Source: Ministeria vibrans ATCC 50519 (Eukaryota > Protista > Filasterea). From it: 60,722 nt of DNA. Shown one piece after another: positions 18,018 through 25,379 of this stretch; the stretch's first letter is position 1; each line of letters begins with the position of its first letter. The notes beneath the pieces were generated by a model. The model saw only the letters and a list, made by a program, of their open reading frames with translations, searched no databases and was not told the origin of the DNA. The DNA lies in assembly GCA_943704425.1 (NCBI GenBank), contig CALSCP010000313.1, positions 108,249 through 168,970 on the forward strand. The letters run 5' to 3'. The translations under genes were made by a program, and so were the position numbers.

Positions 18018-18227
18018 CTTTGAGTGTCACGAGACAAGGCACGGCTACGTGAATGGTCCCGCACAGAAAAGAGCGACGATGATAATAAAATTGTGTGTAA
18101 TAAATTTAAAATTACGTCTTATTTATATTTTATGTCACCGATAAGATAATGAATAGTGAATAATCAGAATTTTTATTATTTAATTCCTATAGAGTCTGTA
18201 TCACGCGGGACGGCGCGGCGCTGCTTC

Positions 18228-21200
18228 ATGGCCTTTTTGAGCAAGCAGGGCGAAGAAGACACCGTTGCCATGGAGCCGCTTCGGCGCGCGACACACACTA
18301 AAATGTTTCAAACGAGTGTTGCCTCTCCTGTGCGCCGTCGAACCATCGCAACCGTACCACAGGCGGCGTCGGAAGTTGAAGCGACCACAGTGAACATTGT
18401 TTCCTCCCCAACCATGGCAAAAATTGTCGAAGAGAAGGCGAGCGCGACAGAAACGTTGCCGACACGAACGCGACGCAAATGTCGCCTTTCCCTTGTGTCC
18501 TCCATCCTTCTCCTGCTGATCATTGTGCAGCTGCTGAGCTTGTGCATTGTTGCTGGCGTCTGGTACTCGCAGTACCTCGAGACTACCGACGTAAGAGTGG
18601 AACGTACCTATTCATTTTTGTTGAAACACAATGCTCTGCTTCACTCGTTAGAGCCTGCAATTGGGGCTGTTGCAGTCGTCGGCTGCTGCTATTTCCGTGT
18701 ATCTTGCGTCAGAGCTGGGTCGTTTTGACTCGTCTATTCTCACGGTGACAACGCTCGTCAACAATGGTATCCTGGAAGATGCCCTTCTGTACAGGGGACA
18801 GTTGACGTGCAAGAGTTTCTCGTGGAACGCCTCGGTGTACAGCGAGGAAGAGGTTGTCCAGCGGACGCTTAGCGGCTTCTCCAATGGCACTACCCTTGGC
18901 GATGCAATGCGTTCCCAATTTCGCATCTTGAGCTCCCTCTACTCGAGCGAATTCTCCGACACAGTGGTAACGCATTTAATTTTTTGTTGTTGCTTTTTTG
19001 TTTTTGTTTTGTGTGTTTCCACCGAGGACAGCGCTCTATTCTCTACGTAGTGTTTTTTTTATTTTTTTTTTGTATTTTCTTGTAGAATCCTTTTTTGTTT
19101 AATTCCTTTGGGCAGTTTGATGGCGGTACACTGCTGACGGTGCAACAGGCGGCAGTGCTGACGCGCGACAATGCACTGACGTCCACCTATCTGCAAAGCG
19201 CCGATTGCGAGGCAAACCCCGGGACGTTTACGTGTAGTCCTCGGCCGCCACAGTCGAACCAGCCGCAGCCTTATGATCGGTCTATTGTGAACACCTATGG
19301 CGTCCTTGATGTTGCATCACTCGACGACCCGGGCGCGTGGAACCGTGTAACCTATGAGCTGGGCAATGCCAGTCGGCTGTACCATGGGTTTGCAGCGACG
19401 CAGATTGTGGCACAATGGACTCCCGTGGATTGGTTGAGCACTTCTCCAGACGCTCCTGCTTGCCCCACTTTGACATGCCCATTCGACCTGAGTGGCCTGA
19501 ACATTGACAACCCCAGCGAACTGTACGACTTCCCTGCGTGTTTGCGAGGCGAAATGGCATCGATGCAGTCCACGGCACCTCTTGCCCCTGAGATTGTCTC
19601 TTTGCTTAAGAACCAGCCTCAGCGCAACGTTTCTACCGCCGTATATGTTCGCAACGGCCTCACCGATCCCTATTCCATCGGTACTGCCTGTGTTGTTTTT
19701 TTTTTGGTTATTTTTGTTTTTTTTGTTTTTTTTTTGTTTTCTTTTTTTTTGCATACTTTCTTTATTTTTTTTTGTTTTGTCTTTTTTTTCTTACACCTCT
19801 ATCACTTTGGTTTTTTTTCTTCCTACATCATCTCTTTTGTGTGTACATAGCGATTGTTGGACCGTCTTACAATGGAACGGGGTTCTTTGGAGTCTCATTG
19901 AGTTTGCGCGCAATAGAAACTGATGTGTACGAGCGAATGCTTCTTCAGTCTCAGACATTGCTGGTTATCCAATCCGATCGCTGTGCTCTTCCCGCCAGTC
20001 AGTCCTATATTTTAGTTGCAGTAACGTCAAATAATTAGTCGTACCGACGTCGGACAGTAATAATTAACTTTTTTTTTTCTCTGCGTGTGTGTTTGTGTGT
20101 GCCGCAGCAACAAGAGAGCGGGTGCGGGACACGACTGGACTGCATTGTGTCGCATGCAGTTGCGCCTAGTGTGCTGACGGCAGAACAGAGTCAGCTAGTC
20201 GAGTTTGTCTGTGAGCAGTTTGAAGCGAGCGAGTCGAGTGCCTTTAATGGAATGTGGATCAAGTCGAACAATTACATCGTGGCTACCAATGTACTTGGCA
20301 TGGACATCACCGACCGCATTGTTGTGCTCTTGACGCCCCGTGATGCTGCACAGTCCAGCGTTGAGACTGGCACGATTCGCGTATGTCTCTTTTATGGAAG
20401 AATGTTGAAGTGATTGTTTGTTTTTGTTTTTGTTTTTGACTTAGGCTGCCGGTGCGAGTCTCTCTCTTGTGGTGCTCATGGTTTTTATCTGTTTGCTTAT
20501 TGCCACATGGCTTGCCCGCAGGTTTAAAAAGATGCAGGTCAGTCAAATGCTTTCTCTTCTCGTCCCTTTGATATATAGTTAATTTCGTGTGTGCCACTGT
20601 GATATATTGTTGAAATTAACTTTATGGTTTCGTTTTTGTAGTCTCGCATGCGCAATATGGTGGAACGCATTGATGACGACAAGTTTGACGAATCAGCAGA
20701 AGACGAGGCACTCTTAGGAGGAGTACGATGAAAAACACAACACAAAATTTGTGGTTGTGCTATTTTTGACTCTTTTTGTACTCTGTTTGATAGTTTGGTC
20801 AACTGGCAATGCTGCGGATGATGTGGAAGCGACAGAGCCAGGACACACGTCTTCTTGTATATATATATATTATATCTCTTTATCACTTTGTTTCCCCTCT
20901 CTCTATCACTTTGTTTCTTGCTTCTCTCTTTTTCAATTTGTTCTTTCCCCTCTCTCTATCACTTTGTTTCTTTCCCCCTCCTCTCTCCTCTCTCTATCTA
21001 TTTCGCAAACCCCTTTGTTTTGTATGCGCGTCCCACCTAACTCTCTTTGCTTTCTGTTTTGCATTCTAGGCGATTGCGAATAAGCTGCGTGCTCAGTTTT
21101 ATCGCAGAAGGTCAGTTTGTTTTGCAGTTTGACTTTTTTCTTTTGTAATTCATTATTATTGTTCTGAATCGATTTTCCTTCTTTGTAGGTTTCTTGACAC

Positions 21201-23634
21201 CCGCGCTGCGCTGAATTCCGCTGTGACTGTACCCTGGCGACTTCCGTACGATGCACAATGCACATCCGGCAACTTTCTTATTGTTATTCCCCTCTTCAGG
21301 TACAAACCCGTGAGTGTGTACGTGGGCACATGGAACGTGGGGAATGCGGCTCCCTCGGCCGATCTGCGCGAGTGGATTCACGGCGATCATGACCTCTTTG
21401 TCTTTGGTCTTCAAGAATGCGTCTTTGGCAAGGGCAAGGTATTATTTTCCCTCTCCATCCACACACCCACGCGCAGCATAATTACATAATAGTCATTATT
21501 TCTTATTTTATTCATCATTATATAATATCGTTGTTCTCATATGCGAGTAGGAAGCGAGCAAGTCTGGTGAAAAGTTTGCCACACAAGTCCAGAAGCTTCT
21601 TGGTCCAGGTACTGCTGCTTCCCATCACTCAAGGAAGAATCACAACAAACTTTTTTTTTTTTTCATTTGCGTGTGATAGATTACATTCGTGTGTCACTTG
21701 TGTCGATTTTGCCGAGCAACGCTGAACGATTGATTGACGGCGCAACGAAAATGAGCGGATTGCGTGTGCTTGTGATGGCACGACGTGAACACGCGCTTTT
21801 CATTGACAATGTGAGTGTGGGGCGCGAAGGGACTGGAATTGCTCATATGGGATGGAACAAAGGTACACACACACACACACACAGCAAAAAAAAAAGCGTT
21901 TGCTGATTGTTGTTGCGGGAACAGGCGGAGTGGGTGTCTCGCTCTCTTTCTATGGACGTTCCTTCCTGTTTGTCAATGCCCATCTCGCAGCCCATCAGGT
22001 ACAATACATTGAGCGATGGATAAATGTACGAATAGCTGAATTGTGATGCACAGGGGAAACTGTCTGAGCGGAAGGACAACATTACTGAGATTCTGACGGG
22101 ACTCAATGCCAAACTGACTCCCTCCGACACTCTCACCTCTGCCTACGATTACTTCTTCTTTTTTGGCGTACGCTCGAAACTATCATTGCACGACTAACAC
22201 ACAGCTTGTTTTTTCGTCTTTTTTAGGACCTTAACTTCCGAGTGGTACCTGCGAATTGCTTTATTCCGTGTTTCTTCTGACGCTGTTTGTTTGTGTGTGT
22301 GTGTTTTTTTTTTTTTTTTTTTTGTAGGATTTGCCTCGAGAGGAAGTACTTTCGCTGATAGAGTCAAAAGAAGAAACGGGAATCACTCGACTGCTTGAAC
22401 ACGATCAGCTGAACATTGCCCGAAAATCGGCCTTTGCGCTTGCCGACTTTGACGAAGCCCCTATTACTTTTATGCCCACGTTCAAAATGGAGCGTCAGCG
22501 CCACCAGGTTTACGAAAGCAAAGTGAAGCGTGTACCCAGCTATTGCGACCGTGTGTTGCTTAAGCGCGCTCCACATCTGCCCGTGCGCTGCCTCGAGTAC
22601 GCCAGTGCGCCTCACATCCTTTCGTCCGATCATCGTCCCGTCTTTGCCACCTTCCTTCTTGACCTGCCGCTTCACTATGCGCCTCCTCGCCCGACCGAAT
22701 CATGTACCATTTCCATCGAGTCACTTCGTATCACCACAGTAAGACTGTGACTATCTTCTGATCGAAACACACACCTGATCGACCCTTTCTTTAGATTTTT
22801 GCTCCAGAAAAACCCAACTCAACAACGGCAGGAAAATTTCATGTGGGTGTCTCTGGTCACTGGGTACGTCAAAGGGCATTAATAACAATACGAATTTTCA
22901 ATTTACAATAATATTTTTTCTTTTTTTTTTCTTTTCATCAGTTCCAACCCACTGAGCTGTTGGCGTGCGAAGGAACCGAACATGTTCTGTTGTGTCCGCC
23001 TCTCTCTGTGCGTCCTGTCTTCTCTGATCGTCGATGGCTACGCGAACAGAGTTTGGTGATGTCGCTGACGCGCGAGAAGACTGCGTCTAAGCGCGATCAC
23101 TTTCAGGGCCGCCTTAGTCTTGGGCCGCTCTTTGATGCGCTTGCGTCGGCCGTCGCCACCGACTCTGCTGGTCTTGTGAGTGGCGTTCCGTTTGAATTGA
23201 CTCTGAGTCGTCATTCGCCACGCCGTTACCTTGCCAAGGGCATTATGCGCATTTCCATTTCGCCTTTGATTGCAACAACAGCAGTGCCGATCGAGTCGAA
23301 GGATGCTGACAGTGGCAGTGCCGACGAACACACCAACGCCGCCGCTACTGCTGCTGCTGCCGCCTTTACTGTTGCGAGCCGACGCAACAGCGATGCGACT
23401 GGCTACGGACCGGACGAACTTGCAGACTCACTTGAGTTTTCTGGGATGATTGACAGTGACCATTTCCGTGCGGCCCATCGCGAGTCTTCTTCCACACTTG
23501 CGTTTTCTGGGATGATTGACAGTGACTATTTCCGTGTGGCGCATCGCGAGTCTTCTTTCGCCTCCAACTCGGACACGGACACCAGCAGCATCACTGAGAA
23601 CAGCACGACTTTTGAATCAGAGTCCATTGTATGA
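18228..23634 (+). CDS. Receptor-type inositol polyphosphate 5-phosphatase (~1269 aa, 19 exons): TM1, Cache-like ectodomain, TM2, HAMP-like, 5-phosphatase, SHIP-type C2
   Basis: Exons 18228-18590, 18652-18966, 19086-19680, 19851-20020, 20108-20380, 20445-20537, 20642-20722, 20794-20856, 21070-21110, 21189-21245, 21300-21438, 21551-21608, 21680-21862, 21925-21998, 22054-22167, 22227-22244, 22328-22738, 22795-22863, 22942-23634. All introns GT-AG, phase-compatible, 3810 nt with no internal stop. Catalytic motifs GTWNVG, FGLQE, NKGGV, HLAAH, FGDLNFR, PSYCDRVL, SDHRPV. The phosphatase call is near certain; the single-gene fusion is a manual model. Confidence 0.82.
23429..23557 (+). repeat. 66-bp tandem duplication in the phosphatase C-terminal tail
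   Basis: Two near-identical copies starting at 23429 and 23495 encode LEFSGMIDSDHFRAAHRESS and LAFSGMIDSDYFRVAHRESS. Confidence 0.9.
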
Positions 23635-23684
23635 TTTGTGTACATGCACACATATTTTTATACTATTGTACACTCATGTTACTT

Positions 23685-25379
23685 TCACTCCATCCACTCG
23701 TATGCCATGGCCGCACTGGACTTCATGTTAAGCACAGCATGCCCCCACGTACGAGGGACAAAGACCACATCACCGGGCTCCTGAATGAACTCTAGCAGAG
23801 TCGCAGAATGCCGCTGCTTTTCTCCCATCCATTCTTGAATGTGAAGGGAACTGAAGTGAGCGTATTCGGGCGGTGTCAGGAACCAACGCTTGCGTCCAAA
23901 AACAAGGCCGTTAAGAGCGTGACCATGAAAATGAGGTGGTGCGCCGCTACCGGCGGGTCCTAACATGAACTGAGTCAGAACCGGCCGGTCGTGCTGGAGG
24001 GATGCTGGCAAGGGCGCGTCAAGTGCCATCTGGCGTGCCAGTGGTCCCGCGTCAAAAATGTACCGCGGCAGTGTCTGCGCGTCCGTTGCTTGTTTGTCGC
24101 GCGGAATCATTTCATCGCGAATAAACTCATGCAAGGGACAACGATGCGATGGTCGCCCATACAGCGACGCATACGGAATGCCGCCAACCTTCACATGCTT
24201 CGAACCGTGTTCCCGAATTAGATTGCTGGGCGTCCAACGACCGGTGGCAGGCCAATGCTTTGCCACGCCGCGCATGAGAAGTGGGCGTCCGACAATGACG
24301 TAGTCGCGCGTAAAGACGCTTGCTGACGGAAGATGATTTAAAGTGGCGATATTGAAAGAGTTGGACTCGTCGTCGTCGACGACGGTTGAGGGTGAAAGTG
24401 TTCTTGCAAGAGTGCTGTGAAAACTGCTGCGCGCACACATTTGTGGAGTGCGTGCATTCATGTCGACACTCTTGAGTTGATTTAGCCAATTGGCTGCGTT
24501 TCCTGCAAGCCGCTTCAAGACTGCGACACACTCCGCAAATCCATAGGCGGACGCCAAGTGCAAGGGTGTCTGTTGATACGCGTCGCGATGCCACAGACAG
24601 CCCTTGTCGCGCGCCATTGTTCCCACTCTTTCGCACGCTACAACATGACCGCTGCCACATGCTAAATGAGCGGGTGTTCGACCGTGGCGATCGGTGGTAC
24701 ACACATTAGCACCAAGTCGAAGAAGTATCTCGAGATCTTGGGTACCGGTGTGCCTCACAACATCAGAATACACGATGGACGATCGTTTGCTCGCAGGCAT
24801 ATCCATCGAAGTGAGATCAAGCGTTTTCCGATGTGTTTCGACGAGGTCAAGTGCATTGAGAAAGACGCGAGCAAGTCCACTCGCCTTCGCTTCCGCCACG
24901 GTGTGCAACGCGGTTGCATTGTGCGTGTCTCGCAGGTTCACGCAGTGTAGCTCCTCCGTCGACATGTCCGGTCCAAACCGGCTCTCCAAAGCCTTAAGAG
25001 CGGGAACAAGTCGATAGTGGGCTGCCAGATACAACGGACACGCAGCCAAGAGTGCTTCTGCGTCGGTGTGCTGCAGCAGCAACGCAAACGTCTCCTCGCA
25101 CCGTTGCAGTCTCAGTGCATCTCGAACCATTGCAACTCCGTGCCACTTGTCCAACACTGTATTCAGGGCATATGTCCCTGGCGCACGCTGGGCGTTTGCC
25201 AGGCCAGGCGACGCGTCAATCGACGATTGTAGCGAGTCAACATCGCACCGCTCGATCGCTCTCCAAAACTCGCCATTGGCACTATCGCTTTGTGAAGAAG
25301 ATACCGCTACCAACGAGGGCCACCATTTAATGAAAAGAATACTCGCCACACCCACCAGAGTGGCGGTGAGCAGTTTCAT
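23685..25379 (-). CDS. Signal/anchor + ankyrin repeats + JmjC (JMJD8-like) protein, intronless, 564 aa
   Basis: Hydrophobic N-terminus; ankyrin motifs GRTPAHLAC, QQTPLHLASAYG; JmjC GPAGSGAPPHFH...GRKRWFL...QEPGDVVFVPRTWGHAVLN. Confidence 0.88.
   Translation of the reverse strand: MKLLTATLVGVASILFIKWWPSLVAVSSSQSDSANGEFWRAIERCDVDSLQSSIDASPGLANAQRAPGTYALNTVLDKWHGVAMVRDALRLQRCEETFALLLQHTDAEALLAACPLYLAAHYRLVPALKALESRFGPDMSTEELHCVNLRDTHNATALHTVAEAKASGLARVFLNALDLVETHRKTLDLTSMDMPASKRSSIVYSDVVRHTGTQDLEILLRLGANVCTTDRHGRTPAHLACGSGHVVACERVGTMARDKGCLWHRDAYQQTPLHLASAYGFAECVAVLKRLAGNAANWLNQLKSVDMNARTPQMCARSSFHSTLARTLSPSTVVDDDESNSFNIATLNHLPSASVFTRDYVIVGRPLLMRGVAKHWPATGRWTPSNLIREHGSKHVKVGGIPYASLYGRPSHRCPLHEFIRDEMIPRDKQATDAQTLPRYIFDAGPLARQMALDAPLPASLQHDRPVLTQFMLGPAGSGAPPHFHGHALNGLVFGRKRWFLTPPEYAHFSSLHIQEWMGEKQRHSATLLEFIQEPGDVVFVPRTWGHAVLNMKSSAAMAYEWME

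What the first reader, a model, noticed from the sequence alone, without database searches (positions are those of the whole stretch)
18228..23634. Candidate new receptor class: two-TM Cache-like sensor wired to a SHIP-type phosphoinositide 5-phosphatase
Seen: 19 GT-AG exons join in one frame (1269 aa), which the ORF track does not show. Order is TM1 (LVSSILLLLIIVQLLSLCIVAGVWY), a ~460-aa domain with Cys residues and N-glycosylation sequons, TM2 (ASLSLVVLMVFICLLIATWL), a helical linker, a complete 5-phosphatase with all catalytic motifs, and a C2 segment (RPVFSDRRWLREQSLVMSL) resembling the SHIP1/2 C2. The ectodomain has dCache-like hallmarks: a long first helix, FLFNSFGQFDG, IVGPSYNGTGFFGVSLSL..I, LLVIQSD and IVVLLTP. 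Established: TM-Cache-TM-HAMP is the chassis of bacterial chemoreceptors, histidine kinases and some cyclases, while characterised 5-phosphatases (SHIP, OCRL, synaptojanin, INPP5) are not ligand-binding integral receptors. Inference: a small-molecule-gated PIP3/PIP2 phosphatase, possibly for chemotaxis or nutrient sensing.
Basis: partly seen in the sequence, partly recalled or inferred. Interest (0 to 1): 0.92.

Follow-up and report, generated by a model that had tools for sequence, protein, structure and literature searches.

The report
Receptor-like membrane SHIP-type lipid phosphatase
A protist gene, confirmed by RNA to be one 19-exon transcript, joins a large outward-facing domain of unknown fold, held between two membrane helices, to an intact SHIP-like phosphoinositide 5-phosphatase; this layout is not described for the enzyme family, and the proposed Cache sensor fold could not be confirmed.

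Summary
RNA contigs from two studies give one spliced transcript, and the 19 GT-AG exons (18228-23634, + strand) read as 1269 aa.

- **Topology:** there are only two hydrophobic segments (aa 87-113 and 576-596), and the flanking charges fit N-in/C-in. The 462-aa loop between them carries 10 Cys and 5 N-glycosylation sequons.
- **Catalytic half:** it is a 5-phosphatase with all catalytic motifs. It sits closest to SHIP1/2: these are the best PDB hits, and a SHIP profile beats a synaptojanin profile on every exon. A weak, collinear match to the SHIP C2 follows.
- **What is missing:** the SH2 domain of true SHIPs is absent. The same genome has a separate true SHIP orthologue.
- **Outer domain:** it is an orphan. 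The largest exon found no relative among 1.84 billion proteins, and no exon gave a Pfam, PDB, atlas or paralogue hit.
- **Cache and HAMP:** neither gained statistical support in exon-wise profile tests. A low-confidence fold of one exon is an unspecific alpha/beta sandwich.

By operator rule the joined protein was never searched, so the fold question stays open. The verdict is a new receptor-like variant of a SHIP-type phosphatase, with the sensing mechanism unproven.

The parts
18228..23634 (+). Whole coding region: 19 exons, 1269 codons plus stop. Exons: 18228-18590, 18652-18966, 19086-19680, 19851-20020, 20108-20380, 20445-20537, 20642-20722, 20794-20856, 21070-21110, 21189-21245, 21300-21438, 21551-21608, 21680-21862, 21925-21998, 22054-22167, 22227-22244, 22328-22738, 22795-22863, 22942-23634.
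   Evidence: Spliced RNA contigs and joints. Frame and length check.
18228..18485 (+). N-terminal cytosolic segment, aa 1-86. It looks low in complexity and ends in a basic cluster (TRTRRKCR).
   Evidence: Translation. Flank charge +4. No Pfam hit.
18486..18566 (+). TM1, aa 87-113; a signal-anchor type first membrane helix.
   Evidence: Hydropathy maximum 2.99 over 19-mers.
18567..20453 (+). Outer (luminal or extracellular) domain, aa 114-575. It is encoded by the end of exon 1, exons 2-5 and the start of exon 6. It has 10 Cys and 5 NxS/T sequons and is an orphan at sequence level.
   Evidence: for composition. No relatives or families found.
20454..20516 (+). TM2, aa 576-596.
   Evidence: Hydropathy 2.78. 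It aligns to TM2 of bacterial sensor profiles at 12.5 bits and at hhalign P 0.003, as any TM helix might.
20517..21245 (+). Juxtamembrane linker, aa 597-684, built from the end of exon 6 and the small exons 7-10. It is proline-free up to aa 679. It reads as an amphipathic helix, an acidic connector ending in GG, then a long second helix.
   Evidence: A 100-degree hydrophobic periodicity peak for aa 597-614. The HAMP tests were not significant.
21300..22666 (+). Inositol polyphosphate 5-phosphatase catalytic domain, aa 685-992, exons 11-17, with all catalytic motifs intact.
   Evidence: Pfam PF22669. PDB hits SHIP1, SHIP2 and OCRL. Collinear exon-wise hits to the SHIP HMM.
22227..22244 (+). 18-nt microexon encoding DLNFRV, most of the GDLNFR catalytic motif.
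   Evidence: It is the only exon chain that fits the RNA contig length and keeps the frame open.
22697..23268 (+). C2-like region after the phosphatase, aa about 1003-1148: the end of exon 17, exon 18 and the first part of exon 19.
   Evidence: The exon 17 alignment to the genome's SHIP orthologue runs on into the first C2 strand. Exon 19 residues 23 to about 110 align to the second half of the C2 in the SHIP HMM at 2.5-3.1 bits, above all 300 shuffles. Pfam gives no C2 hit.
23269..23634 (+). Apparently disordered C-terminal tail, aa 1149-1269, plus the stop codon. It contains a tandem 22-aa duplication at 23431-23562, each copy with an F-x3-H spacing.
   Evidence: Translation. The duplicated motif is visible in the DNA.

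Best explanation
This is one expressed gene for a two-pass membrane glycoprotein. Both ends are cytosolic, and a 462-aa domain of unknown fold faces outward. An 88-aa, largely helical linker follows TM2 and leads into a catalytically intact SHIP-family 5-phosphatase plus a C2-like module.

In true SHIP enzymes an SH2 domain brings the catalytic module to the membrane. Here that N-terminal part is replaced by a permanent membrane anchor, an outer domain and a helical linker. The most likely mode of action is therefore a receptor-type lipid phosphatase. The enzyme sits at the inner leaflet and removes the 5-phosphate of PI(3,4,5)P3, and possibly of PI(4,5)P2. Its activity or clustering would be set by what the outer domain binds or touches, passed through TM2 and the linker. 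This would resemble receptor guanylyl cyclases or receptor tyrosine phosphatases.

Shown here: the transcript, the exon model, the two hydrophobic segments, the catalytic motifs and the SHIP affinity. Inferred: the orientation, the substrate, and any control from outside.
For: - Single spliced transcript in two studies.
- Unique 19-exon open frame.
- Only two hydrophobic segments, with positive-inside flanks of +4/-2 and -1/+5.
- Ten Cys and five sequons in the loop.
- Pfam 5-phosphatase at 92 bits, with all motifs present.
- SHIP1/2 are the best solved relatives.
- The SHIP HMM beats the synaptojanin HMM on every catalytic exon, and the hits are collinear, including the C2.
- The genome keeps a separate classical SHIP orthologue on contig C883 (E 7e-82 to SHIP2). 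This gene is therefore an extra, remodelled copy rather than a mis-joined SHIP.
- The linker is proline-free and its first helix has a clean 100-degree periodicity.
- Direct receptor-to-5-phosphatase fusions have a published precedent in the GPCR-INPP proteins.
Against: - No ligand, no fold and no homologue is known for the outer domain.
- 5-phosphatases act as monomers, so control by a dimeric helical linker is not an obvious mechanism.
- A tethered enzyme could simply be constitutive.
- Orientation and glycosylation are untested.
- Substrate preference is inferred only from family affinity.
- The OCRL, INPP5E and INPP5K families were compared only through PDB ranking, not with profiles.
- The C2 signal is weak, at about 3 bits.
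Confidence: 0.5

Rival explanations
1. Anchor only. The two membrane helices and the outer glycoprotein domain merely place a constitutively active SHIP-like phosphatase at a particular membrane, such as the plasma membrane, a phagosome or a contact site. They may also serve adhesion. There would be no ligand-dependent switching, and control would come from expression or trafficking.
For: - SHIP enzymes are regulated chiefly by recruitment to the membrane (established knowledge), so a permanent tether may be sufficient.
- The outer domain is a lineage-restricted orphan with no recognisable binding fold.
- No significant HAMP or other transducer signal was found in the linker.
Against: - A 462-aa Cys-paired domain and an 88-aa linker built from five conserved-frame exons are costly for a mere anchor.
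- The linker's first helix starts directly at the membrane with a regular amphipathic pattern, as in signal-transmitting receptors.
Confidence: 0.3
2. The outer domain is a double Cache (PAS-like) small-molecule sensor. The linker is a HAMP plus signalling helix. The gene would then be a bacterial-type chemoreceptor chassis gating a SHIP-type phosphatase.
For: - The position between two TM helices.
- Non-significant but collinear best placements on my dCache-TM2-HAMP profile. The exon 5 residues 51-85 land on the last strands before TM2, with the right spacing. The exon 6 lands on TM2. The start of exon 8 (FGQLAM) lands on the HAMP 'lgqlaa' column block within one residue of the ungapped register. 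The exon 7's best ungapped placement falls inside HAMP.
Against: - No Cache or HAMP profile reaches significance on any exon.
- The placements above have P of 0.26 to 0.7.
- AF2 on exon 3 failed, with pLDDT 30.6.
- The genome shows no dCache_1 or sCache_2 match and no HAMP match above cut-off (best 17.4 bits against 25).
- The domain would need about 200 extra residues compared with dCache_1.
Confidence: 0.17
3. Artefact. Two neighbouring genes, a membrane protein and a phosphatase, have been wrongly joined. Alternatively, the upstream half is non-coding.
For: Assembled contigs can merge overlapping transcripts. The same contigs do run on into the convergent downstream gene.
Against: - Every junction between the two halves (20537|20642, 20722|20794, 20856|21070, 21110|21189, 21245|21300) is a GT..AG splice present in RNA contigs of two studies and absent from DNA.
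- The frame stays open across all 18 junctions.
- Both halves lie on the same strand with no intervening stop or terminal exon.
Confidence: 0.02

Closest known systems
SHIP1/SHIP2 (INPP5D/INPPL1), the SH2-containing PI(3,4,5)P3 5-phosphatases
   Same: The catalytic domain is closest to SHIP in PDB ranking and in profile scores. It has a GTWN-x-G type first motif. A C2-like module follows the phosphatase directly, with a SHIP-like KP-I-L-x-D...L-x-x-Q segment.
   Different: There is no SH2 and no recognisable PH-R domain or NPXY tail. The whole N-terminal recruiting part is replaced by TM1, an outer domain, TM2 and a helical linker. The same genome has a separate classical SHIP orthologue.
GPCR-INPP bigrams of oomycetes and Nannochloropsis (PMC5784254)
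   Same: A membrane receptor module is fused directly to an inositol polyphosphate phosphatase domain. Those fusions too are known only from sequence.
   Different: They have a seven-helix GPCR module and no large outer domain. This gene has two helices and a 462-aa loop. It also sits in a genome that carries a metazoan-like SHIP orthologue; first-stage notes (unchecked) report animal-type receptor domains.
Voltage-sensing phosphatases (Ci-VSP, TPTE); comparison from my own knowledge
   Same: A membrane-embedded sensor directly controls a phosphoinositide phosphatase that removes the 5-phosphate.
   Different: VSPs use a four-helix voltage sensor and a PTEN-fold (Cys-based) phosphatase, not an Mg-dependent 5-phosphatase. 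They have no outer domain.
Bacterial TM-dCache-TM-HAMP sensors (chemoreceptors, histidine kinases)
   Same: The order of parts is the same: TM, large outer domain, TM, helical linker, output. Several best local placements are collinear.
   Different: There is no significant sequence or profile similarity. The output is a eukaryotic lipid phosphatase. The outer domain is about 200 residues longer than dCache_1.
Receptor-type enzymes of animals (receptor guanylyl cyclases, receptor protein tyrosine phosphatases); comparison from my own knowledge
   Same: The logic is the same: an outer domain coupled through the membrane to a cytosolic catalytic domain.
   Different: Those are single-pass type I proteins with a cleaved signal peptide. 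This one is two-pass with a cytosolic N-terminus, and its substrate is a lipid.

Membership tests
Inositol polyphosphate 5-phosphatase (Pfam PF22669 Exo_endo_phos2 / IPPc) | Profile match above the curated cut-off | tested here: met
   Exon 17 scores 92.1 bits against a 27-bit cut-off. Exon 11 scores 19.2 bits over the first 37 profile positions. The own-genome scan finds the same place.
Inositol polyphosphate 5-phosphatase (Pfam PF22669 Exo_endo_phos2 / IPPc) | Catalytic and metal-binding motifs: WN-x-G/N, GLQE, N-x-H, GD-x-N-x-R, P-x-W/Y-CDR, SDH-x-PV | tested here: met
   All six can be read in the translation. They align to the SHIP1 and SHIP2 motifs.
SHIP subfamily (INPP5D/INPPL1) | Catalytic domain closer to SHIP than to other 5-phosphatases | tested here: met
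   PDB ranking puts SHIP1 at 66.5 bits, OCRL at 57.1, SHIP2 at 55.9 and INPP5E at 48.9. SHIP2 and SHIP1 top the list for exon 11. The SHIP HMM beats the synaptojanin HMM on exons 11, 13, 14, 15 and 17. No profiles were built for OCRL, INPP5E or INPP5K.
SHIP subfamily (INPP5D/INPPL1) | C2 domain directly after the phosphatase | tested here: inconclusive
   The hit to C2 positions 767-850 of the SHIP HMM is collinear. It scores 2.5-3.1 bits, above all 300 shuffles. Neither Pfam nor the PDB search gave any C2 hit for this region (PF24147 was not among the matches). Pairwise BLASTP to the paralogue's C2 finds nothing.
SHIP subfamily (INPP5D/INPPL1) | N-terminal SH2 domain | tested here: not met
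   No SH2 on any upstream exon. The N-terminus is a cytosolic tail followed by TM1.
Cache sensors (dCache_1 PF02743 and relatives) | Profile match to a Cache family | tested here: not met
   No Cache family in Pfam at E up to 10 on exons 2-5. My own dCache profile gives -1.1 bits at best, and hhalign P is 0.26 or worse. The six-frame scan of the genome has no candidate. The joined domain was not searched, by operator rule.
Cache sensors (dCache_1 PF02743 and relatives) | PAS-like alpha/beta fold with a long N-terminal helix | tested here: inconclusive
Cache sensors (dCache_1 PF02743 and relatives) | Location between two transmembrane helices | tested here: met
   Hydropathy analysis. This feature is shared with many other sensor folds.
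HAMP (PF00672) | Profile match of about 50 residues directly after TM2 | tested here: inconclusive
   The region is split over exons of 31, 27 and 21 aa. Pfam gives nothing. In my own HAMP HMM only the TM2 exon scores, at 12.5 bits. The placements of exons 7 and 8 fall in or near the expected register but are not significant. The genome has no HAMP above cut-off.
GPCR-INPP bigrams | Seven-helix GPCR module N-terminal of the phosphatase | tested here: not met
   Only two hydrophobic segments occur in 1269 aa.

The most novel reading that the evidence does not exclude
A eukaryote has wired a bacterial-style sensor chassis to a SHIP-type PIP3 5-phosphatase. The chassis would be a two-TM Cache/PAS-like ligand-binding domain plus a HAMP-like linker. 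An outside small molecule would then switch phosphoinositide breakdown directly, with no kinase, G protein or adaptor in between.
Probability: 0.15. Interest if true: 0.85.

Novelty: new variant of a known kind. Interest (0 to 1): 0.6.

Why it matters
PIP3 turnover by SHIP enzymes is normally controlled indirectly: a receptor is phosphorylated and the SH2 domain docks on it. A SHIP-type catalytic module built into a membrane protein with a large outer domain would be a one-protein route from the outside of the cell to phosphoinositide breakdown.

Outside the 7TM GPCR-INPP predictions of oomycetes, no such layout is described. Here it occurs in a genome that also carries a metazoan-like SHIP orthologue; first-stage notes, unchecked here, report animal-type receptor domains. 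It therefore bears on how PI3K/SHIP signalling was assembled before animals.

It also offers a compact experimental object. The cytosolic half can be assayed on its own, and the outer domain can be swapped or cross-linked to ask whether a 5-phosphatase can be gated across a membrane.

If instead the outer domain is only an anchor, the gene is a lineage-specific curiosity.

Tried and rejected
1. **Relatives of the outer domain.**
   - HMMER of exon 3 against 1.84 billion representative proteins gave two spurious hits: a translated tandem repeat, and a 26-aa repeat motif.
   - The JGI metagenome scan with exon 3 found nothing.
   - The word-index search with exon 5 found nothing.
   - The own-genome searches with exons 2, 3 and 5 returned only themselves.
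   - Metagenome loci found with exon 17 are ordinary 5-phosphatases with no upstream match to exons 1-10.
2. **Family libraries.** Pfam and NCBIfam on all outer exons at E up to 10 gave only chance hits: gerPA, MUCL1 and RluE.
3. **PDB sequence search.** Exons 2, 3, 4 and 5 gave nothing meaningful.
4. **ESM atlas.** There was no usable hit for exon 5. Exon 3 gave sub-threshold carboxypeptidase rows at 0.79 or below.
5. **AF2 without an alignment.** Exon 3 failed. The exon 5 model was of low confidence, and the fold searches on it were unspecific.
6. **My own dCache+HAMP and HAMP profiles.** They were built from bacterial genomes reached through a 16S primer pattern. Only the TM2 exon scored.
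7. **F&H motif idea for the duplicated tail.** F and H have the right spacing, but position 9 is Ser, not hydrophobic or Arg as the published consensus requires. I dropped this to a passing note.
8. **Literature.** No paper describing a two-TM 5-phosphatase was found.
9. All searches and folds of the joined spliced protein were omitted under the operator's rule. I did not run complex prediction, because no binding claim is made.

Full report
**Scope and rule followed**

All database searches, family scans and folds were run exon by exon, by window reference. The joined spliced protein was built only inside scripts. There it was used to check frame, length, hydropathy, charge, Cys and sequon counts, and helix periodicity. 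Searches or folds of the joined ectodomain, linker or whole protein were left out. That is the main limit on this report.

**1. The observation**

The region reads as a chain of short GT-AG introns (54-213 nt, 34% GC) between exons of 54% GC.

RNA evidence settles the model:
- Runs X1 and X3, from one study, each hold a single spliced contig (5590 and 5511 nt). Each starts at 18213/18217 and covers every exon to beyond 23900.
- Run X5, from another study, holds a 1270-nt contig that begins in the TM2 exon and runs to 22661. It also holds a 429-nt contig joining exons 4 and 5 and the first letters of exon 6.
- Twelve GT..AG joints are listed. The 18966|19086 junction shows as pieces adjacent in the contig record; 20380|20445 rests on the X5 loose end.
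- DNA run X11 covers the region without any of these joints.

For the stretch 21856-22332, only one combination of GT..AG introns fits both the contig length and an open frame. It includes an 18-nt microexon (22227-22244) that encodes DLNFRV. The contigs run on into the convergent downstream gene. That reflects overlapping 3' ends, not a shared transcript.

**2. Anatomy**

Two hydrophobic segments stand out and nothing else does: aa 87-113 and 576-596. Flank charges of +4/-2 and -1/+5 fit an N-in, C-in topology with the 462-aa loop outside. The loop has 10 Cys and 5 NxS/T sequons. The 673 cytosolic residues after TM2 have 6 Cys and 4 sequons.

After TM2 come about 88 residues without proline up to aa 679. 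They read as a first amphipathic helix with a clean 100-degree periodicity, an acidic connector ending in GG, and a long second helix. Five small exons encode this linker.

Next is the phosphatase domain, exons 11-17. Its motifs GTWNVGN, GLQE, NAHLAAH, GDLNFR, PSYCDRVL and SDHRPV are all intact. It matches Pfam PF22669 at 92 bits. A beta-rich region of about 145 residues follows, and then a tail that looks disordered and contains a tandem 22-aa duplication.

**3. Which phosphatase**

- Against solved structures, exon 17 ranks SHIP1 first (2.6e-17), then OCRL, SHIP2 and INPP5E. Exon 11 ranks SHIP2 and SHIP1 first.
- The genome holds about six 5-phosphatase genes.
- Contig C883 carries a classical SHIP orthologue (7e-82 to SHIP2, including the C2). 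Contig C1735 carries a synaptojanin-like gene.
- BLASTP of exon 17 gives 75.5 bits to the SHIP orthologue. That alignment continues into the first C2 strand. The synaptojanin-like gene gives 68.9 bits.
- I built profiles from 22 SHIP-family and 24 synaptojanin-family proteins. The SHIP profile wins on every catalytic exon: 95.8, 25.9, 19.0 and 10.2 bits on exons 17, 11, 14 and 13, against 69.0, 16.2, 11.9 and 6.9; exon 15 gives 5.1 bits with no synaptojanin hit. All hits are collinear.
- Exon 19 residues 23 to about 110 align to the second half of the C2 in the SHIP profile. The score is small (2.5-3.1 bits) but exceeds all 300 shuffles.
Pfam's SHIP C2 model does not reach it.

I accept 'SHIP-type phosphatase plus C2-like module' as moderately supported. 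The protein is not a SHIP in the full sense, because the SH2 domain is absent.

**4. The outer domain**

Every route gave nothing:
- The largest exon (198 aa) has no relative among 1.84 billion representative proteins or in JGI metagenome contigs.
- Exons 2, 3 and 5 have no paralogue in the 29.7-Mb genome.
- Exon 5 shares no words with any protein of comparable length.
- Pfam, NCBIfam, PDB sequences and the ESM atlas give no lead.

The library may withhold this genome's own proteins. The absence of a self-hit therefore means nothing, but the absence of any other relative stands for exon 3.

To test the Cache idea directly, I reached bacterial genomes through a 16S primer pattern. I fetched 30 dCache_1 sensors and built a dCache-TM2-HAMP profile from 19 of them. 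With HMMER and hhalign, only the TM2 exon scores, at hhalign P 0.003.

Some best placements are collinear with the bacterial layout:
- Exon 5 residues 51-85 fall on the last strands before TM2.
- The start of exon 8 falls on the conserved HAMP 'lgqlaa' block, within one residue of the ungapped register set by exon 6.
- Exon 7's best ungapped placement lies inside HAMP.

None of these is significant, with P between 0.26 and 0.7. A separate HAMP profile of 27 sequences again scores only the TM2 exon. The genome shows no dCache_1 or sCache_2 match and no HAMP match above cut-off (best 17.4 bits against 25).

The Cache reading is therefore neither confirmed nor excluded. I put it at about one in six.

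**5. How it most likely works**

True SHIPs are regulated by being brought to the membrane. This copy has exchanged the recruiting half for a permanent anchor, a large outer domain and a rigid-looking helical linker. The economical reading is a receptor-type lipid phosphatase. It would act on PI(3,4,5)P3, and perhaps on PI(4,5)P2, at the inner leaflet. The outer domain would set its activity or clustering through ligand or contact.

The main rival is an anchor-only, constitutive enzyme. A mis-joined gene is practically excluded by the splice evidence.

**6. Comparison and novelty**

- The nearest published idea is the 7TM GPCR-INPP fusions of oomycetes and Nannochloropsis (PMC5784254), which are themselves uncharacterised.
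- Voltage-sensing phosphatases share the logic but use a different sensor and a different catalytic fold (my own knowledge).
- Three literature searches found no two-TM 5-phosphatase.

I rate this a new variant of a known kind. The enzyme family is known, and the receptor-like architecture with an orphan outer domain is new.

First-stage notes on this window mention the same linker idea (s1-768507). That note comes from the same reader and is not independent evidence.

Noticed in passing
window 20857-21069 (intron 8): A CT-rich, low-complexity stretch inside the longest intron. It attracts contig depth in the thousands in all four runs and gives many false joints in the DNA run. It behaves like a dispersed simple repeat of this genome.
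   Followed up: no
window 21246-21299 (intron 10): This 54-nt intron is in frame and free of stops (ORF 21223-21489). Retaining it would add 18 residues just before the phosphatase domain. The RNA contigs show only the spliced form.
   Followed up: partly
window 23431-23562: A tandem duplication of a 22-aa unit in the C-terminal tail. Each copy carries F-x3-H, the spacing of the OCRL-binding F&H motif. Position 9 is Ser rather than the hydrophobic residue or Arg that the published consensus requires.
   Followed up: partly
L164 (G000:C883:39568-42984), ORF 292-2382 on the minus strand: This is the classical SHIP orthologue of the genome. Its C2 domain is interrupted by an insertion of about 290 residues that looks low in complexity: SHIP2 aligns to residues 13-322 and again to 612-690.
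   Followed up: partly
window 23635-23900 and beyond: RNA contigs of this gene continue into the convergent ankyrin-JmjC gene (23685-25379, minus strand). The two 3' ends are about 50 nt apart at the coding level, and the transcripts evidently overlap.
   Followed up: no
window 21348: A single exonic difference, G>A, between the window and DNA run X11. It falls at a third codon position and is synonymous (Ala). Two further differences are intronic, at 20582 and 21912.
   Followed up: no
window 19272-19360 (exon 3, residues about 63-88): A 26-aa stretch, IVNTYGVLDVASLDDPGAW, is 53% identical to a thrice-repeated unit of an unnamed 196-aa database protein (P0002). This is probably chance but was not examined further.
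   Followed up: no
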